From: Octopus sinensis
Lineage: Eukaryota
Length of the DNA stretch: 64,000 nucleotides
Reading direction: 5' to 3'
NCBI RefSeq assembly: GCF_006345805.1
Contig: NC_042997.1
Location: forward strand, 98,704,001 to 98,768,000
Positions 7,947 through 64,000 of the stretch are shown here, piece by piece. The stretch's first letter is position 1. Every line of letters starts with the position of its first letter. The notes under the pieces are model-generated. The model made no database searches, was not told the DNA's origin, and worked only from the letters and a program-made list of their open reading frames with translations. Made by a program: the position numbers and the translations under genes.

Positions 7947-10355
7947 ATATTCTCCCATAACAACTGAAGAGGTCACCCAGGCACTGCAAAGACTAAGCAA
8001 CTGGAAGGCACCTGGGCATGACAAGATCCCCAACTTCTGGTTGAAATATCTACCAGGAATGCACAAAAAGCTGGCTGAAAGCTTTAACAACATACTGGCA
8101 GAGCCAGAGACAATGCCTGAATGGCTCACGAAGGGGAAAACCATCTTAATTCCCAAATCCAATGAGACAGCAAAACCAGAAAACTACCGACCTATAACCT
8201 GTCCTGTCTCCCTACAATGTACAAAGCATTTACTGCAGTAATATCACAAAGGTTAAACAAGCACCTGGACGAAAACAACCTGTTTCCAGAAGAGCAGAAA
8301 GGATGCCGCAAAGGCTCATACGGCTGTAAAGATCAACTAATGATCAATAAAGCCATAACTGAAGACAGCCACAGAAAGAAGAAAGGCCTCAGTATGGCCC
8401 GGATCGACTACAGAAAGGCGTTTGATAGCATCCCCCACACATGGAACCTCGAAACACTAGCCATTAACAAAGTAGCACCAACAATCATAAAATTCATAGA
8501 GCACTCTATGAATAAATGGCAAACAGTGCAACAGCTCCAAACAAAAGAGGGACTCATGAAAACCAAAGACATCCCCATTAGAAGAGGAATATTCCAGGGA
8601 GACACGCTCTCTCCACTCCTTTTCTGCTTGGCACTGTCACCTCTATCTGATATGCTAAATAGAACTGGATGCGGATATAAATGTTACGGCAAAACGATCA
8701 GCCACCTTTTATATATGGATGACCTAAAACTATACGTTGCAAATGACAAACAGCTGGAAACACTATTAAAGACCGTTCATGGATTTACCAAAGAAACAGA
8801 TATGAAATTTGGATTAGAAAAATGCGCCAAACTAACCATGAAAAGAGGAAAACTAGTTAAGAGTAACAACATCACACTAGATAAAACCAATGAAATAAAA
8901 GAATTAGACCAAAGCCAAACTTACAAATACTTAGGAATCCATGAACTAGATAAGACACAACACACACACATGAAAGAGAAAATAAAAAAAGAATATTATA
9001 GACGAGTTAGATCAATACTAAAAACAGAGCTCAATGCTAAAAACAAGATAATAGGTATCAACACTTTAGCTGTCCCAGTTATAAGTTACAGCTACAATAT
9101 CCTTAACTGGACACGAAATGACCTGTCCAAAATAGATAGGAAAACAAGAAAAATACTGACAGGATCTAGGATGCATCACCCAAAATCTGACATAGAAAGA
9201 CTATATATACAACGTATAGAAGGTGGTAGAGGCCTTATACAGCTGGAAAACTACTATAAAATAACCACCATAGGACTGCAAAAATACCTACTTCAGAAGA
9301 AGGAAAACTGATCCAGATAGCAGCAAAACACGAGCAAAACAAAAAAACTGTTCTCAGTATTTAAGGAAGCTGACAAACAAACAAGAAATCATACCACCTA
9401 ATAAACACAAAGAAGAATAAGAAGATGATGAAGAAACACAAAAGCTATAAAACAAATGAAATCCAAACTAAAAATAGAACAGCAACGAGCCATGATAAAA
9501 CGATGGCAAGAAAGCCCTTCATGGTAATACTGCACTAAACTAAACGCAAAAGAAATAGACAAGAAAAATCCCAGCAATGGTTGAGAAGCTCAGGACTCAA
9601 AGCAGAAACAGAGGGATTTTTTAATTGCAGCACTAGACCAAAGCCTCCCCACCAGAAATTACCAAAAACATGTAATGAAAAGAAATATTACAAGTAACTG
9701 CAGAATATGTGGAGATGGACAAGAAACAATAAATCATATTATCTCTAGCTGCCCAGTCCTGGCTAAGAAGGAATATATTCACAGACATGACAGAGTTGGA
9801 ACCTACATACATTGGAAGCTATGCCAACATTATGGAATAACAACAGAAAAAGATGGTATAGGCACACACCAGAAAAGGTCACAGAAAACGAGAAAGCAAT
9901 CATACTCTGGGATATGCCGAACACACAGATAGAGAAATTAAGGCCAACAGACCAGATATAGTTGTCAGAGATCATGAAGAAAAAAATGCTTTCTAATTGA
10001 TGTATCAATACCGGCAGATGACAACGTGTCTCTAAAAGAAATGGAGAAACTCTCAAAATACAAAGACCTGGAAATAGAGATAACTAGAATGTGGAACCTG
10101 AAAACAGAAACAATTCCTATCATAGTAGGTGCATTAGGCATGATAAAAAAATTCAGACAAATACATAACAAAAACACCAGGACTTACAAACACATATAAC
10201 ATACAGAAAATTGCACTACTAGGCACTGCACACATCCTACGCAGAACACTTTCCATACAATAACCATCAGAGCATCACAACAAATCACAGCACATACCCA
10301 GGCACCAGAGCTGCGCTCGGTAGTGAAGTGAAAGCACACTATAAAAATAAAACTA

Positions 10356-33799: not shown

Positions 33800-34395
33800 C
33801 GCTTGTGAGGGGAGGGGAGGTAGGAGGATGGGAGGTAGAAGGACGGGAGGTAGAAGGACGGGAAGTGGAGGAGGGGAGGTAGAAGGACGGGAGGTGGGGG
33901 AGGAGAGGTAGGAGGGGAGGTAGGAAGAAGGGAGATAGGAGGAGAGGAGTAAAAGGAGGGGTGGTAGGAGTAGGGGAGGGAAGGAGAAGGTGGAAGAAGA
34001 AGAAGAAGTAGAGGAAGAAGAAGAAAAGGAAGAAGACAAGAAGAAGAGGAAGAAGACAAGAAAGAAGAAGAAATAGTAGTAGTAGTAGTAGTAGTAGTAG
34101 TAGAAGAAGAAGAAGAAGAAGAAGAAGAAGAAGACGAAGAAGAAGAAGGAGAAGGAGGAGAAAAAGAAGAAGAAGTAGTAGTAGTAGTAGTAGTAGTAAG
34201 TAGTAGTAGTAGTAGTAGTAAAAGACGAAGAAGAAGGAGAAGGAGGAGGAGAAGAAGAAGAAGAAGAAGAAGAAGAAGGAGAAGGAGGAGGAGAAGAAGA
34301 AGAAGAAGAAGAAGAAGAAGAAGAAGAAGAAGAAGAAGAAGAAGAAGAGAAGAAAAAAAAAAAGAGAAGAAAAAGAAGAAGAAGACGACCATGAC
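33800..34395. repeat. purine-rich compound microsatellite (GGA/AAG/AGT)
   Basis: Direct reading; it explains the spurious long ORFs at 33776-34599. Confidence 0.95.
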
Positions 34396-45249: not shown

Positions 45250-46430
45250 CCGATAGATCTCATTATTCTATGTCCTAGAATTATGTCTCATCCGTAGATT
45301 ACACCTTGATGACATTTTCGGACAGCTGCTTATGAGGTGAATGATATTTTTGGCGTTACCTGCGCAAAATCTGCATCAATTATCACATTTAGCTGCTTTT
45401 CCTGCGTCCCTGTCCCTTTTGTGCATTAGGTACTTAGTTGATATTTCCTGTTCCTGGAATGCAAACGCATAGCCTTCAAAGTTGTAGGTAGTAATCCGGT
45501 TATTGATCCAAGATAGACCCATTTGATGATTAATGTTTCTATCATCTCGGAGCTTTCCACTAACATATCCATGCATGGTCTTCTGTTGATATGCGCTCAT
45601 CCTTTCTCCTGATGATACATTGCGGAAGAGACGTGCGACTTCTTTGGGCATGTATTTAATGTTACAAGACAAGGAATGCTGCTCAAGAAGCCGCCTTCAA
45701 AGTATCATGATATTATCAGCCTCATTTATGCTAACTTGGTCAAGAGATGCACTTCGATTCTTGGTGATTAAAAGATGTTGCCGAAGGAATATGATACGAC
45801 ATTCAAAGGTACTCAGGGTTGATATTAGCCCGTGCTGCCTTGTTTTCGTTTTAAGTAAAGGCGCTCTACGTCACTGTTGATTTGGAAATTATGTGTGCTG
45901 GTTAGTATCTTCCAGATTTTCAGGTTTTCACATCAATGGCTCGAATCTCATCATGCTTCCAATCAAACAGTCCAGATGTTGGTACGACTACTGGCACAGC
46001 AAACACATTGTAAACCACTGTTTTATTTGATGCACACTGTTCCGAAGTCCAAATTTTCTTTATTCGACTCTAATAATTTTTAGTGACACGTGTTTTGTTA
46101 CAGGTTCACTTGTAAGATATGTTTTCATCCACCCCTAGATACATGTAATATTCCTCATCAGATATATGGGAGACAGTTCCGTAATTGATAGAGATGTTGC
46201 TAGTTCATCGTGACCAAACATCTGCTCTAGAGATGTTGCTAGTTCATCGTGACCCAAAATCTGCTCTATATCTTTTAAGAGTGTTGTAACCAGCTGAAGG
46301 CTTTTCTCCATCTCTTAATATATGTTTCCTTGTATATTTGATCAATAATATAAGTTCGAGTTAAATATTGGTTCTCATTTCTTGAAATTGAAGGTGCTAT
46401 GCTGCACCTTCATTTATTAATTTTACCTTT
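45250..46430 (-). mobile_element. RLE-type LINE fragment
   Basis: MHGY...EGYAFAFQEQEISTKYLMHKRDRDAG, plus RT-thumb motifs in adjacent frames. Same family as 20722-21352. Confidence 0.75.
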
Positions 46431-46808
46431 GTGGTTTTGATTGCTATGGTCACTCATAATGTATACAGTTGGGGCCAAAATGTTCAGAACGGCATTGTTT
46501 TCGTCAGAAAAGTAGGTATACGTATTTATCAAAGTTGTTTTATATACTATAATTTTCACAGATAATAAATACGATATCAATTGTTATTGCCTGAGATTTT
46601 GGTGTTATTTGAGAGGATAATACAAGAGTTATGGATGATTTAGTGATTTACTGCAAAATCCATGGCGGCCAAAATGATCAGAACGGTTGCTTTTACTCCG
46701 TGTTTTAGTATAATTTAACCGGCAAACCCTCATGTTTTGAATTTGTTTACGTGATGGTTCGTTTACTAAACATTAGTAAGAATATCTGCCGTGTACTTTG
46801 TTAATATA

Positions 46809-47825
46809 ATGCCACTTACTCCGTTACCAATTCGTCAGCAGATTATTAAGCTTCGAAAAAAGGATAATTTAAGTATTGGGTCTATTGCAAAGATTGTTAA
46901 CAAGTCAAAAAGTGTTGTTCACGGTATTCTTAAGGTCTACGACGATTGTGGTTCGTGTGAAGCAAGAAAGTCTACAGGTAGGCCAAGAAAAACGACCAAG
47001 AGAGAAGATCGTGCTATGGTAAAGTTGGTTAAATTGAACAGATTTAAAACTGCTGCTGCTGTTTCTCGGGAAATGAGCATTGTACTGAAGAAAACTTTAT
47101 CTCGAAAAACTGTGTCTCGTCGTTTAGTTGAACATGACCTACAGGTAAGAGCACCTGCAGTGAAGCCACTGATCAGCTCCAAGAATAAAAAGTGTCGTCT
47201 TACCTTTGAAACCGAACATGTGTTGTGGTCTCAAGAAAAATGGCAAACGGTGCATTTCAGTGATGAATCTAAGTTTGTTATTTGGCTCACAGATAGGAAA
47301 AGGTACATTCGTCGAAAAGTAGGTGAAAAATTGTTGCCTAAATGCCTTAAGACCAGTGTTAAATTCGGCTGAGGAAGTGTCATGGTTTGGAGGATGATAT
47401 CTGGGGATGGTGTGGGCTCTTTCGTGCGATTACATGGAAAAGTAAATGCAGGAGTTTATAAACAACTTATAAAAGATCATGCCTTGCCTGTGCTGAGAAA
47501 TTCAACTAAGCGATCACCCATATTCATGCAGGACAATGCCTCATGTCACAAGGCTAAAGGGGTCATGAACTTCCTCAAAGCTGAAAAGGTTATTGTTATG
47601 CATTGGCCTGCTCAAAGCCCAGATTTCAATCCTATTGAAATTGTGTGGAATATTCTAGGAGAACTTTTGAAAGCCAGAAATACTAAAACAACCGAGCAAT
47701 TATGGAATGCCCTTCAGGAAGAATGGAATAAGATCACCCAGCAAGAAATTGAAAATTTAATTTCCTCATGCAGTCGAAGATGTCAAAGTGTGATTGAAGC
47801 TAAAGGGCTTCACACTAAATATTAA
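46809..47825 (+). pseudogene. Tc1 transposase, 338 codons, single premature TGA at 47370-47372
   Basis: HTH domain, GRPRKTT, FSDESK, KFG*GSVMVW and QDNASCH...(34 residues)...NPIE, ending HTKY-stop in the same frame. Confidence 0.92.
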
Positions 47826-48011
47826 ATAATTCCAGTATTCTCTGTCATTTTTGATTATTTTGTTATTTTTTCAACCGTTCTGATCATTTTGGCTGCCATG
47901 GATTTTGCAGTAAATCACTAAATCATCCATAACTTTTGTATTGTCCTCTCAAATTACACCAAAATCTCAGACAATAACAATTAATATCGTATTTATTGTC
48001 TGTGAAAATTA

Positions 48012-48812
48012 TCTCTCTATATATAAACGGCAGTTTGTCTGTCTGTGTGTCTGTGTGTCTGTTAGGTTGTACCCTCACCCTGACCACGGCTTTCAACCGA
48101 TTCTGATGAAACTTGACACACACATAGCCCAATGTCATAATTCAAAACTATCGCAGCGAGAATTTTGAAAAGTTCCCCCAGTTCTGAAAAAATCGATAAA
48201 TTCGACATGGGTCGAGAATCTAAGCTTTTTATATGCAACACATTTTCTACAGACTGTCTAGGGGACGCAACTTGACCTTTTTAACTCTCGGAACACGTGG
48301 GGTAAGTATCCCAAAATGTATAAAAATGTACAAAAATGGCAAAAAAGCGGGCAGCAATGTGAGTGACAACAACGAAAAAGTCAAAAGTGACCAAACTGAA
48401 TGGAAAAGGTTTTTTGATGCACACGACAAAAGCGGTTTATAATAAACCAAGAGTTTGCAAGTAGCGTCCGAGGACCCGTAGGGTACGTCAAAAATTTAAG
48501 GTAAAACGTTTGTGGTGGTAGTTATAAAGAAAGTGTAAACAAAAAAAGTATTCGAATAACTTGCGGCTGCAGCAGCTATTAGCAGAAGTGGCGGTGTTGG
48601 GGGTAAAGTCCCGAATGTAATTTCTTCCTGGTAGGAATTGGTTGGGTTGAATTATCGATAGCTGTTTGATAGTTATTTGGGAGTGAAGAGAAGACATTGC
48701 AACATACACATACATGCGCCTTCGTTCCCTAGAGGGAAAGGACTAGATTGGGATTAGTCGTTGCCTACTAGGGGCTCTTACATACCCGGGCAACGCCGGG
48801 CTATGCTGCTAG
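48012..48812 (+). mobile_element. non-autonomous Helitron (801 bp)
   Basis: Starts with TC after an A and ends with CTAG before a T, with no TSD. Subterminal GC hairpin CCCGGGCAACGCCGGG. Removing it restores the Tc1 terminal repeat (aaaatta|tagaatataaaac). Confidence 0.85.
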
Positions 48813-49254
48813 TAGAATATAAAACAACTTTGATAAAAACTTATACCTACTTTTCTGACGAAAACAATGCCGTTCTGAACATTTTGGCCCCAACTGTATA
48901 ATAGATCTTAATATATTAATATATTAATATAATAGTTTATTGTTTTACTGTACAATTTGAACGTTTTGCAGTTAAGCATTTCAATGGGTTTTTTTATGAT
49001 CTAGTGGGAGGCAGGCTATCTCATTCACACGGAATTGTAAAAGCCTCTGATGAAAAACAAGATCATATTGATAAAATTCCGAAATCACGTGTGAAGGTTA
49101 TATCAAAATATTTATCCTGTGAGTTTATCTCGCCAGAGAAAATGTGGCTTGCTGCTCGACTCCTGAATGCATCATGAGGTTAGTGCTTTTGTGTGGCTGT
49201 ACGAGTTGAAATTTGGCTCTCATTTCTAGCAACTACAGGTGCTATTTTGAACCG

Positions 49255-49329
<75 letters not shown>

Positions 49330-49502
49330 ATATAAACAAAGATAAATGCGATACAATAAAATTAATTATAATCGCCGGTGTACCAGTACACGCCATATAT
49401 TATACATATATCATTACATTCAAGGCGAAGAGTGCACTAGATACACAATAGCTGGATAAATTTAGTGAGATGAAAATTAAAAACTTTTACAAACTTAACT
49501 CT

Positions 49503-49575
49503 TCTTATACTGCAGTTTCGCCAAATTCAGTAATTAAAATAGTATTTATTTACTCAGGCTGGCTCTTCAGTAAGA
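49503..49575 (-). ncRNA. type I hammerhead ribozyme, copy 1
   Basis: UCUUA-CUGAAGA-GCCA...UGGC-GAAA-C(UGCA)G-UA^UAAGA. Predicted cleavage between 49508 and 49507. Confidence 0.9.
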
Positions 49576-49905
49576 TTCCTGTTAATGATGGGAAGACCAT
49601 ATCAATAGACCCATGTGCGTCTATCGAAATGCTCTTTCTAAACTATTCAAAACGCTGCGCAGACTCAGAACAAACCCGACAAAATAGGGGATTGTGGTAT
49701 ATCGTCTAACGGTCAGAAATTTATCGAGAGAATATGTAAACAAAGATAAATGCGATACAATAAAATTAATTATAATCGCCGGTGTACCAGTACACGCCAT
49801 ATATTATACATATATCATTACATTCAAGGCGAAGAGTGCACTAGATACACAATAGCTGGATAATTTAGTGAGATGAAAATTAAAAACTTTTACAAACTTA
49901 ACTTT

Positions 49906-49978
49906 TCTTATACTGCAGTTTCGCCAAATTCAGTAATTAAAATAGTATTTATTTACTCAGGCTGGCTCTTCAGTAAGA
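49906..49978 (-). ncRNA. type I hammerhead ribozyme, copy 2
   Basis: Same motif; cleavage at 49911/49910. Confidence 0.9.
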
Positions 49979-50308
49979 TTCCTGTTAATGATGGGAAGAC
50001 CATATCAATAGACCCATGTGCGTCTATCGAAATGCTCTTTCTAAATTATTCAAAACACTGCGCAGACTCAGAACAAACCCGACAAAATAGGGGATTGTGG
50101 TATATCGTCTAACGGTCAGAAATTTATCGAGAGAATATGTAAACAAAGATAAATGCGATACAATAAAATTAATTATAATCGCCGGTGTACCAGTACACGC
50201 CATATATTATACATATATCATTACATCAAGGCGAAGAGTGCACTAGATACACAATAGCTGGATAAATTTAGTGAGATGAAAATTAAAAACTTTTACAAAC
50301 TTAACTTT

Positions 50309-50381
50309 TCTTATACTGCAGTTTCGCCAAATTCAGTAATTAAAATAGTATTTATTTACTCAGGCTGGCTCTTCAGTAAGA
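50309..50381 (-). ncRNA. type I hammerhead ribozyme, copy 3
   Basis: Same motif; cleavage at 50314/50313. Confidence 0.9.
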
Positions 50382-50712
50382 TTCCTGTTAATGATGGGAA
50401 GACCATATCAATAGACTCATGTGCGTCTATCGAAATGCTCTTTCTAAACTATTCAAAACGCTGCGCAGACTCAGAACAAACCCGACAAAATAGGGGATTG
50501 TGGTATATCGTCTAACGGTCAGAAATTTATCGAGAGAATATGTAAACAAAGATAAATGCGATACAATAAAATTAATTATAATCGCCGGTGTACCAGTACA
50601 CGCCATATATTATACATATATCATTACATTCAAGGCGAAGAGTGCACTAGATACACAATAGCTGGATAAATTTAGTGAGATGAAAATTAAAAACTTTTAC
50701 AAACTTAACTTT

Positions 50713-50785
50713 TCTTATACTGCAGTTTCGCCAAATTCAGTAATTAAAATAGTATTTATTTACTCAGGCTGGCTCTTCAGTAAGA
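50713..50785 (-). ncRNA. type I hammerhead ribozyme, copy 4
   Basis: Same motif; cleavage at 50718/50717. Confidence 0.9.
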
Positions 50786-51116
50786 TTCCTGTTAATGATG
50801 GGAAGTCCATATCAATAGACCCATGTGCGTCTATCGAAATGCTCTTTCTAAACTATTCAAAACACTGCGCAGACTCAGAACAAACCCGACAAAATAGGGG
50901 ATTGTGGTATATCGTCTAACGGTCAGAAATTTATCGAGAGAATATGTAAACAAAGATAAATGCGATACAATAAAATTAATTATAATCGCCGGTGTACCAG
51001 TACACGCCATATATTATACATATATCATTACATTCAAGGCGAAGAGTGCACTAGATACACAATAGCTGGATAAATTTAGTGAGATGAAAATTAAAAACTT
51101 TTACAAACTTAACTTT

Positions 51117-51189
51117 TCTTATACTGCAGTTTCGCCAAATTCAGTAATTAAAATAGTATTTATTTACTCAGGCTGGCTCTTCAGTAAGA
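51117..51189 (-). ncRNA. type I hammerhead ribozyme, copy 5
   Basis: Same motif; cleavage at 51122/51121. Confidence 0.9.
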
Positions 51190-51520
51190 TTCCTGTTAAT
51201 GATGGGAAGTCCATATCAATAGACCCATGTGCGTCTATCGAAATGCTCTTTCTAAACTATTCAAAACACTGCGCAGACTCAGAACAAACCCGACAAAATA
51301 GGGGATTGTGGTATATCGTCTAACGGTCAGAAATTTATCGAGAGAATATGTAAACAAAGATAAATGCGATACAATAAAATTAATTATAATCGCCGGTGTA
51401 CCAGTACACGCCATATATTATACATATATCATTACATTCAAGGCGAAGAGTGCACTAGATACACAATAGCTGGATAAATTTAGTGAGATGAAAATTAAAA
51501 ACTTTTACAAACTTAACTTT

Positions 51521-51593
51521 TCTTATACTGCAGTTTCGCCAAATTCAGTAATTAAAATAGTATTTAGTTACTCAGGCTGGCTCTTCAGTAAGA
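51521..51593 (-). ncRNA. type I hammerhead ribozyme, copy 6
   Basis: Same motif with one substitution in distal stem II/loop II; cleavage at 51526/51525. Confidence 0.88.
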
Positions 51594-51604
51594 TTCCTAT
51601 ATAT

Positions 51605-51745
51605 ATATGACGGTCTTCTTTAAATTTCCGTCTACAAAATCCACTTGCAAGGCTTTCGTTGGCACGAGGCTATAGAAGGAAACACTTATCCAAGGTGCCT
51701 CGCAGTATGACTGAACGCGAGACCGTGTAGGGAAGGATTCGTCTC
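51605..51745 (-). mobile_element. SINE family B copy
   Basis: Reverse complement of the 55945-56100 type (GACGGAAA...GAAGACCGTC 3' end). Confidence 0.6.
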
Positions 51746-51761
51746 AACACTGAGCCATACA

Positions 51762-51834
51762 TACAGTTTACCTTAATGGTAAAGCATTTGTCGCGTAATC
51801 ACACCGATATGAGTTCGAGTCTCATGGCTGGCTG
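51762..51834 (+). pseudogene. tRNA-Thr(CGT)-like pseudogene
   Basis: T arm ATGAG-TTCGAGT-CTCAT and anticodon loop CGCGTAA; the acceptor stem is broken. Confidence 0.55.
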
Positions 51835-52062
51835 CCGACAAATTTTTCTGTAAAATATGGATAGTTTATCCTGTTCATGCTATATTATTAGCATTATCTT
51901 GCATTTGAGAATAAAATTATTACCTTATCTATATCTTTCAATACATATCAACGCTTAAAAAGCAAACTTTGTTGACTTTTAACGTAAGATGAATTTAACA
52001 TACGATAGCTTCCTATGAAGCTAGATTTATATATCCTAAATTTGTAGAAGAATTTATCGTTC

Positions 52063-52136
52063 GGACGGTTTAGCTTATTGGTAAAGCACTTGACGCGTAA
52101 TCACTGGGATGTGAGTTCGAGTCTTATGGTTGGCTA
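52063..52136 (+). pseudogene. tRNA-Thr(CGT)-like pseudogene, duplicate about 302 bp downstream
   Basis: D arm GCTT-ATTGGTA-AAGC, loop CGCGTAA and T arm GTGAG-TTCGAGT-CTTAT. The 3' flank is also duplicated. Confidence 0.55.
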
Positions 52137-52508
52137 CCGACAGATTTTCCTACTAAATATGGTTAATTTATCCTGTCCATGCTATATTATTGGCATTATC
52201 CTGCATTTGAGGATAAAATGATTTTATATATATGTATGCACACACACACATGTATATGTGGATGTTTATGCGTGAATGCATCTTTAAGCACAAATTTAGA
52301 TATGTATTCATACACGCGCACCCATGCACAATATATATATATATGTGTGTGTGTATGTATGTATGTATCAGTGGTGACTCCGGCACTCGGGCTGTTTTGA
52401 ACGTGTATCTTCAAGCACATTTAATTTCTACTGACACTGACTTCAATTATGGAATTTCAGCCAATAACTCAGGCTCCTTTTATTGAGTCTGGTCGCAGTT
52501 CATTTATT

Positions 52509-53929: not shown

Positions 53930-55599
<1,670 letters not shown>

Positions 55600-55663: not shown

Positions 55664-55944
55664 TATATATATTCTCTTATAGGTTTGAGATTGCAGCTAT
55701 TACTAATCGTAGCGACTAAAGTTTGTGTTGACCTTAAAAGGCAATATCTAATTACAGAATTAAGGGTGATGCGATTGCTACTTCGGAGTAACCCTTATTT
55801 TCAAAACCATGCACACACACACACACGCACATAGTCACACACGCATATATAGTTGTGAGTATGTGAGTGTGTGTATATGTATGCATGCTTTATGTATGTA
55901 TGTATGTATGTATGTATGTATGTATGTATGTATTTATGTATGTA

Positions 55945-56100
55945 TGTATCATTGTGTGCTCAGAGGTTTCCTTCCCAAATACATGGTCTTCCGCTCAATC
56001 ATACTGTATAACACCCTGGACAAGTGTTTTCTTCTATTAGCCTCGTGCTGACCAAAGACTCGTAATTGGACGTCGTAGACGGAAACTGAAAGAAGCCCGT
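55945..56100 (+). mobile_element. SINE family B copy
   Basis: GGACAAGTGTTTTCTTCTATTAGCCTCGTGCTGACCAAAG...GACGGAAACTGAAAGAAGCCCGTC. Confidence 0.6.
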
Positions 56101-56106
56101 CATGTA

Positions 56107-56140
<34 letters not shown>

Positions 56141-57349: not shown

Positions 57350-58150
57350 TTTCTCGACATTTCGGTCAGCATTCATCACTCCACTCTCAGCCACCTTCAC
57401 CCACTACAAACACACCAACAAACACTCATACCTCAACTTCTAATCCTCCCACCTCAAAGACACTAATCTCTCCATCCCCTACTCCCAGTTCCTCTCTCTG
57501 TACAGGCTCTACTGTGTCAACCATGAATTTGAGACTCAGTCTCAACTCATGGCTCGCCACTTCATCCTTCATGGATATCCCCTCTCCACTATTCACACCG
57601 CTCCCGTCAGAGCACGTTCCGTGGACCGTGCATCTGCTCTCTTGCACGTACCCGCGCCGCCGTTACCCGTCGGCCGTTTCGAACCCTCCACCCTATCTCT
57701 CCAACGCACCATTCTCCGATTCCTCTGGCGACTCCAGTCCAATCACTCCACTTCGCACATCTTCCCTAACCTACCCCTCCCCTCCTTCAGATGACCTCAC
57801 AACCTATTTGACCTCCTAGTCATTAGTTTCTTCCGTAACCCCACCTCCCAGCACGTCTCGTTCCCCTGCTCCCGTCCACGCTGCTGCACTTGCTTCTACC
57901 TCCCCAATACCACCATCCTCACAGGCACCTATCATCGAGCCGATCATATCACTGATTGAATCACCTGCACTTCTAGCAATGTCATTTACTGCACCTCCTG
58001 CTCTCTCTGTCCTCTGTAACTCGGTCAGACGAGACGCCGCTTGGCTGATCGGTTCGAGGAACAGCTTCGAGCCATCAGACACCGCAACGACAGCCTGGGC
58101 TTGCCATTTTCGTTCTACCGGTCATTTTTTGCACCACCTGTCTGTGTTCA
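57350..58150 (+). mobile_element. Penelope-like element ORF relic (RT thumb + GIY-YIG)
   Basis: SIPYSQFL, MARHFILHGYPLSTI, FPNLPLPSFR.PHNL.DLLV, PCSRPRCCTC and TCTSSNVIYCTSCSLC..GQTRRRLADRF. Confidence 0.9.
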
Positions 58151-58578
58151 GATTTTTCTTGCACAGGGGCCATCACACTACAACACCACACATCACCACA
58201 CATCACCACACCACTCCACCACACTACATCGCATCACCAATGCACACACTGGCATTGACCATTTCCCAGCACCCACGCTACACCACACCCCACAAAACCA
58301 CATCACACCACCCCGCACACACTAGCACTAGCAATTTCTCAGCACCCACACGATCATATACACACCAGCACATGCACACATCCACACATCAAGGTCACCA
58401 GCCCCTATCCACACACATGCTCTCACATACACACGCATGCGCACCTTCGTTTTAGGATCACAACTACTTTATAATCTCACCTTCTTCCTAGCTCTCCTGT
58501 CTGATCACTTCTGTCCGGCCATCGCCATGATTGACCGTTAGCTTTTTTTTTATTCTCTCTGTTTATTTTCTCGAGTTC

Positions 58579-59171: not shown

Positions 59172-60780
59172 CTGTAGTTCCCTTATCTACCGTTAGACGT
59201 CGTCACTCGTAATTCTCGCGATTGGTTTGAATTCAGATTTGTTTACACCTGTTTATCGGTTACTTTCTCATTCTCATTCATTTGTGACTTTATTTTTTTT
59301 TCCCCATTGCTCTTAATTAAATTCATAGTGAAAGTGGTAAGCGTCATGCTATAACACTGGAAGATAAACTGGCTGTACTGAATCGCCATGAAAAAGGTGA
59401 AAAAGTGGTAGCTGTTGCGAGATCTTTTTGGATGCGTCAGACAACTGCATCGACAATTGTACATAATAAGGACAAGATTTTCGCATATAGCAAATCTGAA
59501 ACCCCAGAGATGAATACTGCCATCAATAAGAAAAGAGGCAAAATCTTTCAAGAAATGGAAAGTCTTTCGCTTTGGATTGTTAGGTTGAATCGTCAGCGTG
59601 CTATTATTATTCAAGAAATCATTCAAGAGAAAGAGTTGCTTGAGGACCTGAAGAAAAAATATCCAGATGAGAAAGATGTAGAGTTCAAGGGAAGTCAAGG
59701 ATGGTTCATGCGATTTACGGAACCAAGAAGTTATCACTCCATTAAGAAGCAAGGCGAAAGTGCATCAGCTGATGAACAAGCTGCAGCAGAATTTCCTAAT
59801 GCAAGAAAATCATCGAAGTAAACGGATTTCTTCCCGAACACACTTTTAACATAGACGAACTAGATTGTAATGGAAAAAATGCCAGACCGTTCATTCATTT
59901 CTAAGGAGGAGAAACTATTCCAGGCTAAAAGGTCTCAAAGAACGTGTGACCATTATGTTGGGAGGTAACTGTGCAGCAGATTTTCAGTTAAAGCCATTGC
60001 TTGTGTATCATGCACGCAACCCCGTGTCCTGAAGAACATAACCAAGGCATCTCTCCCTTTTATATGGATGGCTAATTCAAAAACATGGGTTACTGTTGTT
60101 GTTTTTTAAGATTTATCCTAGCAGCAGAGAAGTACTGTAAAGAGAAGGGGCTTGTTTTTAAGGTTTTATGTATCTTAGATAATGCGCCTGGCCACCCGTA
60201 AAACATCGCGGATTTTGACCCCAATATTACCGTCGTATACATCCCTCCGAGCACCATGTCTCTTCTGCAGCCAATGGATCAGAGAATAATTTCTATCTTC
60301 AAGCGTTACTATATAAAGTGTGCGCTGCGACAATTAATAGCTGCAACTGATTTTGATGAGTCCGTCACACTTCGTGTCTTTTGGAAGAGATACGATACCT
60401 ACAAACTGTGCATAACATAACAGCGGCATGGAATGATGTGCAGAGCACGGCTATGAATTGTGTATCGAAGAAGCTATGCCTGCAATTCGTGAATGATTTT
60501 AAGGGGTTTGATTATGTTGTCATCAACAAAACGTTGGTGACTACGAGCAAAGAACTGGAAATAGATTTGGAGGAGGAGAAACAGACAAGCAGCCCCCGAC
60601 GAACGAGGATTTGACAGAGCTTCACGAGCACCAAAATAAAGACAATGAGGAAGTCGAGCCTGAGCCATATCACTTTATCATTAAGAAAATGCAGCAAGCA
60701 TTTGCACATATCGAAAAAAGTCTTTGTTTGAAGATATGGATCCAAATGCTCAACGCTTTTCCAACATTATGGCTACCTCA
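59172..60780 (+). mobile_element. Tigger/pogo transposon relic
   Basis: KRHAITLEDKL, EFKGSQGWFMRF, GESASAD, FNIDE, SKERVT..LGGN, LDNAPGHP and TMSLLQPMDQ. Confidence 0.9.
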
Positions 60781-62250
60781 TACCAAAGCAGGTCTCACCA
60801 GGGATGAGATTAATGACGTGTTGGCCGCCAGAAAATCTATTATTTAATTTGATACCAAGCTATAGGTCCTTAAAGATGCACCCGACAGTTTTGATGTCAC
60901 GATGGGAAGTACAGATTCAGCACAAATCGCTGATTTGATGTATGTATATCATTTATGAGATGGGTGACCAATTACCAAACATCAATGGAGGTCTATATCG
61001 TGAAGATTGTCTACTGCACCTTCAAAATACTTCTAACGAAAAAATACAAAAGGTTAATTTTTTCCTAAACATGGGCTTAAGCATTGTTTTTGACGATGAT
61101 GTAACGAAAACCAACATTTGGATATTACCTTTAACTTGCATAATGATTCGTACTTCCCACACCATGAACCCTCAACTAATTTAAAATATATTAGCTCTTT
61201 CAGTAATCACTGTAAGGCTATTAGAAATAATCTAGTTAGGAACATTACACTTAAACTTTCTAGATTATCTGCTAATGTTGACATCTTCAACAGTATAGCT
61301 AAATAACTCTGCCTTACTTAAAGCAGGCTATAAAGAAAAAGATACCTATATTAACCCTATTGACATTAATTCTAACTATTAATCAGGACATGAAATCAAG
61401 TTGTAACGATATTAACAATTTTAATGTTATTTTGAATAACATCACCAAATCGAGTAATGTATTTTTGCAGCGTAAGGAAGATAACCGTTATTTAAGACCA
61501 TTTTTTCATTATAAAGGTACTTCGATGACTTGTAAAGATAATTGCCCTAATAACAAGGTATGTCCTAGCAAAACTGTTTGGTTAATAATTCCATATCGTA
61601 AACAGATCAAATCTAACCTCCCTTTCAAGTTTTGTGAAGCAATGGAAAAGACTTTCCCAAGAATTTCAAGATACTATTTGATTATTATCTCACACCGCAT
61701 TAGGATAGGTTTTTCTAACGCACAAAATCTTTCACAAATCATCTCTTTGCATAATAATAAGTTATTAAATACAAAGCCATTTACTGAAAATACTAGCATT
61801 AATTTTGTTAATACTAACCATTCTTTAAATCATAGTAACAGCGGGGTTATTGTTTCTGAAATCAACTCCAATCGCTTTCGTTTTCTTAGCAGTAATTCTA
61901 AGACTGAAAACACTACTTACCAATGTAAAATTACTTTCGGTTCTGACGTCTTTTATTACATAGGTATTTCTTCATCTCAGTTATGCAAAAGAATATCTAA
62001 TCATTACTCTACATTTAGGCATATCAATAAACGTGACAATAAATTGCTTAGTAAATTAATCTGGTAGTCAAAGATCATAATAAACAATTTCATTAGGAAT
62101 GGAATATTCTTTCTATTTGTTTACCGTAAACGTTTCTGCTCGCTTTGTAATAGCGAAATGTTTTATATCCTATTCTCAAAAGACCCCTTTGTAAACAATT
62201 ATATAGAACGCGTTTATCATTGCAAAAATTGGCAGAAACATTACCTTTAG
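60780..62250 (+). mobile_element. Penelope-like element relic (RT core, thumb, GIY-YIG), 5'-truncated
   Basis: FDVTMGSTDSAQIADL, GLYRED, DITFNL..SY.P......YISSFSNH and YYIGISSSQLCKRISNH.STF...LLSKLIW. Confidence 0.88.
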
Positions 62251-62550
62251 TTCCTACAAGTGATTTCTACTATTATATATATAATTTGACCTTTGTTTTC
62301 TTCCATTTCACGTCCACTAAATATATCTAATTCCACGCTTTTAAGCTTTATTCTAATTCACTCGTCGCTATATATTTCTCCACTATTAGTTTTCTGCTAA
62401 TTTCTTTCCTTCTCCACATTCTCTTTCTATATGCTACCTTTGACGTTATATCTGCTAACGTTTCATTAAAAATTAATAGCGTTCCCTTCATCATTACACA
62501 CAGTCATCACATTCTGTTAAAATGTCTTATTGATGTGTTTTGTTTCTTTC

Positions 62551-62638
62551 TTTCGCTGATGAGAAGATTGCATTGCTTTACACCATTCTATTCCTTCTGG
62601 AATAATACTAATGTTGTCTTCGAAACATGTGTCGGAAG
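62551..62638 (+). ncRNA. type I hammerhead with long stem II in PLE 3' region
   Basis: UUUCG-CUGAUGA-GAAGA...UCUUC-GAAA-CA(UG)UG-UC^GGAAG. Stem II extends to about 13 bp plus an inner UAUUCC/GGAAUA hairpin. The first pair of stem I is a G.G mismatch. Confidence 0.75.
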
Positions 62639-63115: not shown

Positions 63116-64000
63116 CGGGTAGTCCGGAAAGTTCGTGCCGATTTATAGTAGCTTACATTTGAGTCCATAAAATAGGATTTGACAACACCTCCATTTAGAA
63201 CACAGTTTAAGCTATCTTTTCGTGGAAGAAGGTTTATGTTCCTATAATCTGTGTTAATTCCGCAACCCTTTAAAATGGAAGATAAGAAAGTTCATTTTCG
63301 GCACTTGATGCTTGTCTTTTTCCGTAAAGCGAAAAATGCCTCACAAGCAACCAAAGAAATATGTGCAGTTTACGGTGATGTTTCTTTATCCGAAAGAACT
63401 GTCTTGAAGTGGTTCACAAGATTCCGAGCTGGAGATTGTTGCCTTATTGATAAAGAGCGATCAGGCAGACCATCCACTACAGATGATGACTAAATCAAGT
63501 CATTAATTGAGAATAACCTACATTGCACAACCGACAATTGGCAGAAATCCTCCACCTATCAAAATACTCGTAACGCTTGGGTACACAAATTCGCTACGAT
63601 GCTTGGGTACCACATAAGGTGGGTGAGAAGAACCTTTTGGATCACATTACACTCTGTGATTCTGAATGAAAATGCGCCTTTTTTAAAGCAAATTGTGACA
63701 GGTGATGAGAAATGGATCATTTACCAAAATGTTCAGAGAAAGCGATCCTGGAGTAAGCGATATGAGCCACCCTTAGCCACCCCAAAAGTGGGTCTTCACC
63801 CTAAAAAAGTCTTGCTTTCTGTCTGGTGGGATTAGAAAGGAATTCTGTACTATGAGCTTCTCCCAAGTAACCAGACAATTAATTCTGAGAATTACTGTGC
63901 ACAACTGAATGAGTTAAAAGCAGCAATTCAAGAGAAACGTCCAGAATTGGCCAACAGGAAGGGTGTTGTATGCCAACATGATAATGCAAGACCGCACGTT
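63113..64000 (+). mobile_element. mariner transposon, decayed, running off the window end
   Basis: MEDKKVHFRHLML (ATG at 63275), IVTGDEKW, LHPKKVLLSVWWD and HDNARPH. Confidence 0.92.

What the first reader, a model, noticed from the sequence alone, without database searches (positions are those of the whole stretch)
49333..51598. Hammerhead-ribozyme tandem array: candidate circRNA-producing retrozyme of about 403-404 nt
Seen in the sequence: about 5.6 near-identical head-to-tail units, each with a complete type I hammerhead on the minus strand (stem I UCUUA/UAAGA, CUGAAGA core, stem II GCCA/UGGC, GAAA, GUA site). Predicted cleavage sites are spaced 403, 403, 404, 404 and 404 nt apart. Established knowledge: metazoan non-LTR retrozymes (reported in corals, the mussel Mytilus and axolotl; related to newt satellite 2 and schistosome SM-alpha) are non-coding tandem repeats of a few hundred bp with one type I HHR per unit. 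Their transcripts self-process into monomers and circles. Inference: this is such an element at the upper end of the known size range, probably cephalopod, and mobilised in trans by Penelope-like RTs, relics of which lie 6-11 kb away. I cannot check whether this family is already described.
Basis: partly seen in the sequence, partly recalled or inferred. Interest (0 to 1): 0.93.

Follow-up and report, generated by a model that had tools for sequence, protein, structure and literature searches.

The report
Octopus hammerhead-ribozyme tandem repeat (retrozyme)
A 2.3-kb block of 5.6 nearly identical 404-bp repeats in an octopus-type genome carries one complete self-cutting hammerhead RNA motif per repeat, so it looks like a new cephalopod member of the known "retrozyme" family that makes small RNA circles.

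Summary
Window 49333-51598 holds 5.6 head-to-tail copies of a 404-bp unit, differing by 0-4 nt. There are six identical type I hammerhead (HHR) motifs on the minus strand, with GUA sites 404/404/404/403/403 nt apart.

The motif has every core nucleotide, G10.1-C11.1 and a two-part stem I. Helix II is unusually long (44 nt). Helix III is 2 bp plus a tetraloop inside the 8-nt palindrome ACUGCAGU, which predicts cleavage as a dimer.

A descriptor of this kind finds about 0.012-0.018 chance hits per 64 kb. Rfam Hammerhead_1 aligns end to end but scores only 21 bits against a cut-off of 34.

The array sits in the (TA)n tail of a SINE. It has no ORF, LTR, PBS or PPT, and 34% GC. It meets the published operational definition of an active non-LTR retrozyme.

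A Penelope-like relic 10-11 kb away, and its Octopus sinensis relatives, carry their own long-helix-II HHR with compensatory changes.

Not shown: self-cleavage, circles, other genomic copies, or a strongly self-paired circle (z = -1.3). Verdict: new member of a known kind, of moderate interest.

The parts
49333..51598 (-). Tandem array of 5.61 units of 403-404 nt. The RNA sense is the minus strand. The RNA-sense 5' end is at 51598 (AGGAAUCUUA..., 5 nt before stem Ia). The 3' end is at 49333 (...CUUUGUUUA), at monomer position about 175.
   Evidence: TRF; unit alignment showing 0-4 differences per pair and the border sequences; sequence read.
51513..51593 (-). HHR copy 1 (stem Ia to stem Ia is 51521-51593). 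A17 is at 51526, with cleavage between 51526 and 51525. It lacks the distal 5' strand of stem I because the array border cuts it off. It has one substitution (A>C) in the distal part of helix II.
51109..51199 (-). HHR copy 2, including distal stem Ib (UUAAC/GUUAA). A17 is at 51122.
50705..50795 (-). HHR copy 3. A17 is at 50718. This copy was aligned end to end to Rfam RF00163 (21.2 bits).
50301..50391 (-). HHR copy 4. A17 is at 50314.
49898..49988 (-). HHR copy 5. A17 is at 49911.
49495..49585 (-). HHR copy 6. A17 is at 49508. It has one A>G change in the internal loop of stem I (3' side).
49257..49332 (.). (AT)n microsatellite next to the RNA-sense 3' end of the array. It is the presumed target and primer site. 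The junction reads (TA)n|TAAACAAAG, where full units read ATATGTAAACAAAG.
51599..51608 (.). Short (TA)5 at the RNA-sense 5' end of the array. It is the other half of the split microsatellite.
51609..51800 (-). SINE-like repeat whose native (TA)n tail received the array. It ends ...GACGGAAATTTAAAGAAGACCGTCA(TA)n. A paralogue at 55937-56140 (+) has an uninterrupted (TA)n/(TATG)n tail. This is context, not part of the element.
   Evidence: blastn and sequence reads.
61360..62067 (+). Penelope-like relic (context). The ORF is related to the C-terminal third (Cys linker plus GIY-YIG-like motif) of 600-720-aa RT-like proteins. It is a representative of the candidate class of autonomous partner.
   Evidence: 125 relatives at E<=1e-3; sequences read; Pfam finds no domain.
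62550..62638 (+). The 3' hammerhead of that Penelope-like family, here degenerate (a G.G pair at the first position of stem I). It reads CUGAUGA / long helix II / GAAA-CAUGUG-UC and is followed by (TA)n-rich sequence (context).
   Evidence: Alignments with three O. sinensis copies; pair counts; coordinates.

Best explanation
This is a young non-LTR retrozyme insertion in an octopod genome. It is a 5.6-mer of a 404-nt non-coding unit whose minus-strand transcript carries one type I hammerhead per unit.

Proposed cycle:
1. Shown from sequence: each unit holds a complete HHR with a GUA site.
2. Inferred: a long transcript of the minus strand is made, by Pol II or by read-through. Pol III is unlikely because the HHR strand has six T4-5 runs per unit.
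3. Inferred: the transcript cuts itself after GUA every 404 nt. Helix III is only A-U plus C-G closed by UGCA, and it lies inside the 8-nt palindrome ACUGCAGU. Two neighbouring ribozymes therefore probably pair to form a double hammerhead, as in newt/axolotl and Penelope-type HHRs.
4. Inferred from the family: the 404-nt monomers (5'-OH, 2',3'-cyclic phosphate) are closed into circles by a host tRNA ligase.
5. Inferred: a Penelope-like RT/GIY-YIG enzyme nicks a (TA)n tract, primes on a TA-rich patch of the circle (UUUACAUAU) and copies it round and round. That leaves a multimer with arbitrary phase inside the microsatellite, which is the structure seen here.
For: Anatomy:
- All HHR core positions are present, with G10.1-C11.1, A15.1-U16.1 and a GUA triplet. 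The topology is type I.
- Stem I is 5 bp, then an internal loop (AGGAA/AAA), then 5 bp (UUAAC/GUUAA). Helix II also has an internal loop 5 bp from the core, which is the geometry natural type I HHRs use for loop-loop contacts.

Statistics:
- About 1e-4 chance per unit.
- Rfam Hammerhead_1 is the best family and aligns over the full model.

Dimer:
- The homodimer cofold MFE contains the intermolecular 8-bp ACUGCAGU duplex (-11.1 kcal/mol).
- The double-HHR sum (-38.9) equals twice the monomer MFE (-38.6). The single HHR fold is 6.5 kcal/mol above the MFE.

Family traits:
- 404-bp tandem units, 33.9% GC, no PBS or PPT, longest ORF 79 aa with no homologues.
- These match the features listed in PMC7229834 and the operational definition in Li et al. 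2026.

Insertion structure:
- The array splits the (TA)n tail of a SINE, and its 3' junction falls in a TA-rich patch of the unit.
- Penelope-like elements favour microsatellites, including (TA)n (PMC8557442).

Lineage context:
- A Penelope-like family in this window and in O. sinensis carries a 3' HHR of the same architecture: 5-bp stem I, helix II of about 50 nt, a 2-bp helix III in a self-complementary octamer. One subfamily also has CUGAAGA and GUA.
- In that HHR, 92% of cells are paired against 35-46% in slid controls, and 8 of 25 pairs show compensatory change.
- That HHR also scores below Rfam's cut-off (17.9 bits). Two of its copies end in (TA)n.

Age:
- Units differ by 0-4 nt, so the array is recent.
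Against: - Rfam's curated threshold is not met (21.2 against 34 bits). At window scale the match would have E of about 2.
- The long helix II (44 nt between the core strands) is atypical for canonical type I HHRs.
- A competing helix, UACUG/CAGUA, sequesters part of the core and the cleavage site in the MFE fold.
- The 404-nt circle is not more stable than shuffles (z = -1.27, 59% paired; linear z = -1.13), unlike the 'highly self-paired' circles described for the family.
- No second locus or diverged copy could be found, so neither conservation of the HHR nor mobility is shown.
- No homology between the unit and the local Penelope-like 3' end beyond the core. There is one borderline collinear match (z = 4.3 in one of eight tests).
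- Shared variants in blocks of units (monomer position 316) show that DNA-level duplication or a heterogeneous template also played a part.
- No TSD can be read in a microsatellite.
Confidence: 0.75

Rival explanations
1. An ordinary satellite or minisatellite built by DNA-level duplication (slippage, unequal crossing-over) at a fragile (TA)n tract. It happens to contain a hammerhead-like string that has no catalytic role.
For: - No Rfam hit at curated threshold.
- The HHR fold is not the MFE.
- The monomer is not unusually structured.
- Only one locus is known.
- Block-wise shared variants show DNA-level duplication within the array.
- At genome scale, several hundred strict-descriptor matches are expected by chance: 0.012-0.018 per 64 kb.
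Against: - The chance of a strict match in a given 404-nt unit is about 1e-4.
- The motif also has G10.1-C11.1 (0 of 31 chance hits), a palindromic helix III (1 of 31) and a distal stem I (7 of 31).
- Its architecture matches a covarying Penelope-associated HHR of the same lineage.
- Unit size, GC content, lack of coding and the (TA)n target all fit the retrozyme family.
Confidence: 0.12
2. Not an independent non-autonomous family, but a tandemised terminal (pseudo-LTR) fragment of an autonomous Penelope-like element. Its coding part was never copied or was lost at this site.
For: - Penelope-like elements insert as partial tandems with HHRs in their pseudo-LTRs, and they prefer microsatellites.
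- Xenopus retrozymes are sister to pLTRs.
- The array HHR shares N7=A, GUA and a palindromic helix III with the L002/L008 Penelope-like subfamily.
- There is a borderline collinear similarity just 3' of the cleavage site.
Against: - There is no RT/EN coding sequence next to the array. Both borders are (TA)n followed by unrelated repeats: a SINE on one side and a Tc1 element 430 bp away on the other.
- 5.6 uniform 404-nt units are not the usual two-pLTR layout.
- There is no detectable homology of the unit to the Penelope-like 3' ends available.
Confidence: 0.1
3. An assembly artefact: an over-expanded or mis-joined repeat.
For: Tandem repeats next to long (AT)n tracts are error-prone in assemblies. 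Nothing in the window can exclude this.
Against: - The units carry distinct variants: two different 1-nt deletions and several substitutions.
- Both junctions with (TA)n are clean.
- Even a mis-counted copy number would leave the unit and its HHR real.
Confidence: 0.03

Closest known systems
Metazoan non-LTR retrozymes (Cervera & de la Pena 2020, PMC7229834: Acropora 220-240 bp, Mytilus 350-390 bp, axolotl 330-350 bp; Li et al. 2026 preprint: 51-972 bp)
   Same: - Tandem head-to-tail non-coding units of a few hundred bp.
- One type I HHR per unit on one strand.
- Low GC; no LTR, PBS or PPT.
- Helix III of 2 bp plus a tetraloop, as in invertebrate and HHR_Amex2 motifs.
- Found together with Penelope-like elements.
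- A copy number below 7, as in 75% of families.
   Different: - Helix II is a 44-nt imperfect hairpin rather than a short stem-loop, so the Rfam cut-off is missed.
- The predicted circle is not notably self-paired.
- The host is a cephalopod, a group not mentioned in the papers I could read.
- Expression, circles and genomic copy number are unknown here.
Hammerheads of Penelope-like elements (Cervera & de la Pena 2014; Lunse et al. 2017), including the octopod family found here (window 62550-62638; O. sinensis L002, L003/L004, L008)
   Same: - Type I topology.
- A very short helix III inside a self-complementary octamer, implying dimeric cleavage.
- A long helix II in the octopod family.
- N7=A and a GUA site in the L002/L008 subfamily.
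- Association with (TA)n.
   Different: - Those HHRs sit once near the 3' end of a coding element. Here the HHR recurs every 404 nt with no ORF.
- Helices I and II have unrelated sequences.
- The classical 'minimal' Penelope-type HHRs lack loop-loop features, whereas this one has a two-part stem I.
HHR-bearing satellites: newt satellite 2 (about 330 bp), Schistosoma Sm-alpha (about 335 bp), Dolichopoda pDo500
   Same: - Tandem repeats of 300-500 bp transcribed into self-cleaving monomer-length RNAs.
- A weak, palindromic helix III that requires double-hammerhead formation (newt).
   Different: - Different phyla and no sequence similarity.
- Those form very large arrays or thousands of copies. 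Here only one 5.6-copy array is known.
Plant LTR retrozymes (PMC4918200)
   Same: Non-autonomous, HHR-processed, circRNA-producing retroelements.
   Different: - They have type III HHRs in two LTRs, with PBS and PPT, 4-bp TSDs and 600-1000 nt circles, and are mobilised by Ty3/Gypsy RT.
- None of these features is present here.

Membership tests
Hammerhead ribozyme, type I | Conserved core C3-U4-G5-A6-N7-G8-A9 and G12-A13-A14 | tested here: met
   CUGAAGA and GAAA are present in all six copies. All core columns align to RF00163.
Hammerhead ribozyme, type I | Three helices around the core with G10.1-C11.1 and A15.1-U16.1, and an N-U-H cleavage triplet | tested here: met
   Stem I is UCUUA/UAAGA. 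Helix II is GCCAG/UUGGC. Helix III is A-U plus C-G. The triplet is GUA.
Hammerhead ribozyme, type I | Type I topology: helix I open, helices II and III closed | tested here: met
   The motif is contiguous over 73-91 nt with loops closing II and III.
Hammerhead ribozyme, type I | Score at or above Rfam RF00163 gathering threshold (34 bits) | tested here: not met
   The score is 21.2 bits. The loss comes from a 38-nt insertion in loop 2. There was no hit at window scale. A covarying Penelope-associated HHR of the same lineage also fails, at 17.9 bits.
Hammerhead ribozyme, type I | Loop 1 / loop 2 tertiary contacts | tested here: inconclusive
   Both helix I and helix II have internal loops 5 bp from the core. 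The canonical interacting nucleotides cannot be assigned from sequence alone.
Hammerhead ribozyme, type I | Site-specific self-cleavage | not testable with these tools
   This needs in vitro transcription. Energetics suggest the dimeric form is required.
Metazoan non-LTR retrozyme | Short tandem repeats (150-450 bp; 51-972 bp in the newer survey), at least 2 consecutive units each with a complete type I HHR, and an HHR fold below -5 kcal/mol | tested here: met
   404 bp x 5.6 units with six motifs. The HHR fold is -12.8 kcal/mol.
Metazoan non-LTR retrozyme | Non-coding; no LTR, PBS or PPT; GC below 50% | tested here: met
   The longest ORF is 79 aa with no homologues. No PBS-like or purine tract was found. 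GC is 33.9%.
Metazoan non-LTR retrozyme | Many dispersed copies (arrays and solo monomers), i.e. evidence of mobility | not testable with these tools
   There is no other copy in the window or in the 19 related loci. Two metagenome pattern scans were empty. No eukaryotic genome could be searched by DNA.
Metazoan non-LTR retrozyme | Monomer circle predicted to be stable and highly self-paired | tested here: not met
   The circular MFE is -84.0 kcal/mol, z = -1.27 against 200 dinucleotide shuffles, with 59% of bases paired. The linear z is -1.13.
Metazoan non-LTR retrozyme | Expressed as linear and circular monomer RNAs | not testable with these tools
   No RNA data were available.
Metazoan non-LTR retrozyme | Found together with HHR-bearing Penelope-like elements in the genome | tested here: met
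   There is a relic ORF at 61360-62067 plus an HHR at 62550-62638, with relatives in O. sinensis. Recently active Penelope-like elements are reported in O. vulgaris.
Metazoan non-LTR retrozyme | Target-site duplication longer than 4 bp, when present | tested here: inconclusive
   The insertion lies inside (TA)n, so any duplication is unreadable.
Plant LTR retrozyme | Type III HHRs in two LTRs, with PBS(tRNA-Met) and PPT | tested here: not met
   The HHR is type I, there is no LTR layout, and no PBS or PPT was found.

The most novel reading that the evidence does not exclude
The array is a frozen product of a very recent rolling-circle reverse transcription. On this reading, a 404-nt hammerhead circRNA was copied 5.6 times from a (TA)n nick made by a Neptune-like Penelope enzyme. 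This would imply a currently active retrozyme/Penelope pair in a living octopod. It would also imply an abundant small circRNA with an unusual long-helix-II, dimer-dependent hammerhead shared with the local Penelope family. If so, this is direct structural support for the still hypothetical Penelope-dependent mobilisation of animal retrozymes.
Probability: 0.3. Interest if true: 0.5.

Novelty: new member of a known kind. Interest (0 to 1): 0.35.

Why it matters
Animal retrozymes are abundant producers of ribozyme-made circRNA, but how they move is still inferred. A cephalopod family would extend the known host range within molluscs.

More usefully, this locus shows three things together:
- an insertion with both junctions inside a (TA)n tract;
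- a hammerhead whose odd architecture (long helix II, palindromic helix III) is shared with a Penelope-like family of the same genome;
- almost no divergence between units.

That combination makes the Penelope-dependent, microsatellite-targeted, rolling-circle model testable in octopus genomes and transcriptomes. It also shows that Rfam's type I hammerhead cut-off misses this lineage's ribozymes, so retrozymes may be under-counted in cephalopods.

Tried and rejected
1. I used the spurious 79-aa ORF of the array as a handle to pull related contigs from the protein collections. It is not on record and has no homologues.
2. Two metagenome scans with family-specific HHR patterns returned zero matches.
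3. Sensitive blastn of the unit against the rest of the window and against 19 fetched loci found only TA-rich low-complexity matches.
4. Rfam at window scale and on 3 kb gave no hammerhead. Only the 121-nt search showed the sub-threshold match.
5. Rod-like circle hypothesis: the fold is not distinguishable from shuffles on either strand.
6. A second ribozyme on the plus strand: none found.
7. Pol III/SINE-type transcription: no tRNA or B box, and six T4-5 runs per unit on the HHR strand.
8. Penelope-like relic at about 57.5-58.3 kb, where a GIY-YIG-like string is seen by eye: no Pfam hit and no homologue. Left unconfirmed.
9. Pfam on ORF 61360-62067 and on its long relatives found nothing. The Penelope-like assignment rests on reading RT, Cys-linker and GIY-YIG motifs in P0138 and P0215 and on the 3' HHR.
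11. Homology between the unit and Penelope-like 3' ends: one borderline local alignment (z = 4.3, 1 of 300 shuffles) among eight tests, not reproduced with the sister copy. Kept as a lead only.
12. Naming the source species: the LINE RT's best hit is 75% identical, in an unnamed assembly. A literature search for the SINE sequence was empty. The species stays unknown beyond 'octopod related to O. sinensis'.
Full report
**1. Observation**

Tandem Repeats Finder reports one long-period array in the whole window: 49328..51598, period 404, 5.6 copies, 99% matches.

On the minus strand, every unit contains the string UCUUA-CUGAAGA-GCCAG...UUGGC-GAAA-CUGCAG-UA-UAAGA. An exact search finds six copies. 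The predicted cleavage nucleotide A17 lies at 51526, 51122, 50718, 50314, 49911 and 49508, giving spacings of 404, 404, 404, 403 and 403.

The five full units differ from each other by 0-4 positions.

In RNA sense, the array begins at 51598 (AGGAAUCUUA, 5 nt before stem I). It ends at 49333 (...CUUUGUUUA), which is monomer position about 175.

**2. Is it more than chance?**

I wrote a hammerhead descriptor with these requirements:
- CUGANGA and GAAA;
- the A15.1-U16.1 pair;
- a U-H site;
- stem I of at least 4-5 bp, helix II of at least 3-4 bp and helix III of at least 2 bp;
- free loop lengths.

It finds only these six sites on either strand of the 64 kb. An even looser 'minimal' descriptor finds nothing else.

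Random sequence with the window's dinucleotide composition gives 0.07 (relaxed) or 0.012-0.018 (strict) hits per 64 kb. That is about 1e-4 for one 404-nt unit.

In 160 Mb of simulated sequence there were 31 strict hits. None had G10.1-C11.1, one had a palindromic helix III, and seven had a distal stem I. The real motif has all three. I noticed these extra features after the fact, so they count as supporting evidence rather than as a formal test.

Rfam gave nothing at gathering threshold on the window. It also gave nothing at E<=10 on 3 kb, probably because the filters dropped the match. When only 121 nt around one copy are searched, RF00163 Hammerhead_1 is the top family:
- 21.2 bits and E = 0.0035 for that small search;
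- model positions 1-45 of 45, with every core column matched;
- a 38-nt insertion where the model expects 8 nt.

The curated cut-off is 34 bits, so Rfam membership is formally not met. The reason is visible in the alignment.

**3. Anatomy of the ribozyme**

Stem I is bipartite:
- 5 bp next to the core (UCUUA/UAAGA);
- an internal loop (AGGAA on the 5' side, AAA on the 3' side);
- a further 5 bp (UUAAC/GUUAA).

Helix II starts with GCCAG/UUGGC and continues, after a small internal loop, as an imperfect hairpin of about 15 bp closed by a hexaloop. This hairpin appears in the MFE and centroid folds. Both helices therefore have a loop 5 bp from the core, which is where natural type I hammerheads make their loop-loop contact. 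That last point rests on established knowledge and was not tested here.

Helix III is only A15.1-U16.1 and C-G closed by UGCA. The octamer ACUGCAGU is a perfect palindrome.

In a 110-nt context:
- The single-hammerhead fold costs -12.8 kcal/mol against an MFE of -19.3.
- The MFE uses a competing helix, UACUG/CAGUA, that hides the site.
- Two copies together are predicted to form the 8-bp intermolecular helix III (-11.1 kcal/mol).
- The double-hammerhead sum (-38.9) matches twice the monomer MFE (-38.6).

I therefore predict weak cleavage by a lone motif and efficient cleavage by two motifs in one multimeric transcript. This is the behaviour described for newt/axolotl and Penelope-type hammerheads.

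**4. The unit as a whole**

- GC is 33.9%.
- The longest ORF is 79 aa, on the other strand. It is not on record in the protein collections and has no homologue.
- There is no PBS-like site, no polypurine tract and no B box, and no tRNA.
- The HHR strand has six runs of T4-5 per unit. From established knowledge of Pol III termination, Pol III could not make multimers, so Pol II or read-through transcription is needed. This is an inference.
- The circular monomer is not unusually stable. Circular MFE is -84.0 kcal/mol, z = -1.27, with 59% of bases paired. The complementary strand gives z = -0.72. The linear folds agree.

The 'stable, highly self-paired circle' described for coral, mussel and axolotl retrozymes is therefore not seen here.

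**5. Insertion site**

The array splits a (TA)n tract, leaving (AT)n at 49257-49332 on one side and (TA)5 at 51599-51608 on the other.

Beyond the short side lies a SINE-like repeat, in the same orientation as the ribozyme strand. It ends ...GACGGAAATTTAAAGAAGACCGTCA(TA)n. A paralogue at 55937-56140 keeps an uninterrupted (TA)n/(TATG)n tail. The target was thus a SINE's microsatellite tail. No target-site duplication can be read in such a site.

The RNA-sense 3' junction falls in a TA-rich patch of the unit (UUUACAUAU). That gives 2 nt of perfect microhomology with (TA)n, or about 7 nt with one mismatch.

Penelope-like elements are reported to favour microsatellites, (TA)n among them (PMC8557442).

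A multimer of arbitrary phase, primed in a TA patch and sitting inside (TA)n, is what rolling-circle reverse transcription of a circle from a nicked microsatellite would leave. This is inference. One variant (monomer position 316) is shared by blocks of neighbouring units. Either DNA-level duplication or a heterogeneous template therefore also contributed.

**6. Host and neighbours**

The window is AT-rich and full of transposons:
- a LINE RT at 8217-9311;
- a Tc1 element with perfect 51-bp inverted ends at 46462-48900;
- pogo- and mariner-like pieces.

A LINE piece (9040-10213) is 91-92% identical to loci of assembly GCA_006345805.1. That assembly is Octopus sinensis. The window therefore comes from a related octopod, and 'cephalopod' is supported.

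Octopus vulgaris is reported to have recently active Penelope-like families.

**7. The Penelope-like relics**

It has no Pfam hit and no homologue, so it stays unconfirmed.

ORF 61360-62067 also has no Pfam hit, but it has 125 relatives at E<=1e-3. [quoted passage not shown] That is the architecture of EN+ Penelope-like elements, although Pfam does not recognise them.

Downstream of the O. sinensis relatives (about 750 bp after the ORF in L003/L004) there is a hammerhead-syntax motif. In L003 it reads CUUUC-CUGAUGA-(54-nt helix II)-GAAA-CAUGUG-UC-GAGAG. The window has the homologous but degenerate copy at 62550-62638.

Across four copies:
- The core strings are invariant while helix II diverges.
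- 92% of cells pair, against 35-46% when partners are slid.
- 8 of 25 pairs show changes on both sides.
- No shuffle of 500 reaches the observed values.

There are only four sequences, and the structure was derived from one of them, so this is moderate evidence.

This HHR scores 17.9 bits with Rfam, which is lower than the array's motif.

Its helix III octamer is self-complementary: ACAUGUGU with wobbles, or the perfect palindrome ACAUAUGU. The L002/L008 subfamily has CUGAAGA and a GUA site, like the array. Two independent copies end in (TA)n.

The lineage therefore has genuine Penelope-associated hammerheads of the same unusual build as the array's. This raises my confidence that the array's motif is real and supports a Penelope link in kind.

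There is no detectable homology between the 404-nt unit and these 3' ends outside the core. One borderline collinear match just after the cleavage site (z = 4.3, one of eight tests, not reproduced in the sister copy) is only a lead.

**8. Comparison with what is known**

Metazoan non-LTR retrozymes have these features:
- low GC;
- no LTR, PBS or PPT;
- expression as linear and circular RNAs.

A 2026 preprint defines active ones operationally and reports:
- the definition: a TRF array, a type I HHR motif in at least two consecutive units, and an HHR fold below -5 kcal/mol;
- sizes of 51-972 bp, with 75% of families having at most seven units;
- a sister relationship to Penelope pLTRs.

This array meets that operational definition and the sequence-level traits. 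It fails the 'highly self-paired circle' trait and the Rfam cut-off. Copy number, expression and circles cannot be tested with these tools.

Cephalopods are not mentioned in the retrozyme papers I could read. The recent O. vulgaris repeat annotation does not mention ribozymes.

The finding is therefore a new member of a known kind, with a variant ribozyme architecture. It is not a new category. At 404 nt it is ordinary rather than extreme in size.

**9. Verdict**

| Explanation | Probability |
|---|---|
| Retrozyme-type, dimer-dependent hammerhead array recently inserted in a SINE (TA)n tail | 0.75 |
| Chance motif in a plain satellite | 0.12 |
| Tandemised Penelope terminus rather than an independent family | 0.10 |
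| Assembly artefact | 0.03 |

Interest is moderate (0.35). It is a useful and testable locus for the Penelope-mobilisation model, and a warning that Rfam thresholds miss these ribozymes. It is not surprising to a specialist.

Noticed in passing
window 61360-62638 (+); L003 10001-11680, L002 10001-12330, L008 3001-4560: A Penelope-like relic (ORF with a GIY-YIG-like C-terminus) is followed by its own type I hammerhead with a helix II of about 50 nt and a self-complementary helix III octamer. The hammerhead is conserved, with compensatory changes, between the window and three O. sinensis copies. Rfam Hammerhead_1 scores it at only 17.9 bits. Pfam recognises neither the ORF nor its 600-720-aa relatives.
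   Followed up: yes
window about 57549-58325 (+): A stop-interrupted reading frame has a GIY-YIG-like string (NVIYCTSCSLCPL*LGQTRRRLADRFEEQLRAIRH) inside a GC-rich, microsatellite-laden stretch. It has no Pfam hit and no homologue, so a Penelope-like origin is unconfirmed.
   Followed up: partly
window 49249-49256 and 51608-51615: The split (TA)n tract is bounded by an exact 8-nt inverted repeat: ACCGTCAT on the + strand at the left and its complement at the right. One side is the end of a SINE. The other side is a different repeat, with a relative at 46354-46400. Possible explanations are tail-to-tail elements or a fold-back at insertion. This is unexplained.
   Followed up: partly
window 46462-48900: A Tc1/mariner element has perfect 51-bp terminal inverted repeats, so it is young. 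Its transposase is split into two ORFs: 46791-47372 (HTH_Tnp_Tc3_2) and 47382-47825 (DDE_3). It ends 430 bp from the array. Another Tc1 fragment lies at 54487-54948 (-).
   Followed up: partly
window 51609-51800 (-), 55937-56140 (+), 51763-51921 / 52065-52223: SINE-like repeats with native (TA)n/(TATG)n tails lie here. A duplicated, weakly tRNA-like segment is also present (Rfam tRNA at 16.7 bits, below cut-off; ARAGORN finds none).
   Followed up: partly
window 49508-51525, monomer positions 258 and 316: Variants are shared by non-adjacent units (position 258) or by blocks of units (position 316). This shows gene conversion, unequal crossing-over or a heterogeneous template, in addition to any single rolling-circle event.
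   Followed up: partly
window 8217-9311 (+) and 9040-10213: A LINE-type RT ORF (RVT_1, 364 aa) has a best relative at 75% identity in the unnamed assembly GCA_024449705.1. The adjacent DNA is 91-92% identical to O. sinensis loci L003/L004.
   Followed up: partly
window 59405-60847 (+) and 63251-63835 (+): A pogo/Tigger-like relic (weak HTH_Tnp_Tc5 match) and a Mos1-type mariner fragment (HTH_48, E = 3e-20) lie here.
   Followed up: no
window 33993-34385 and 34-36 kb: A (GAA)131 microsatellite has several overlapping long ORFs on the minus strand. The surrounding 2 kb has very strong GC and AT skew (0.375 and 0.357).
   Followed up: no
L005-L007, L009-L019 (Logan runs SRR11869384-94): Short contigs (1-2.4 kb) from several sequencing runs carry ORFs related to the Penelope-like relic. 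None contains an HHR or similarity to the 404-nt unit. The nature of the runs (DNA or RNA, and which species) is unknown to me.
   Followed up: partly
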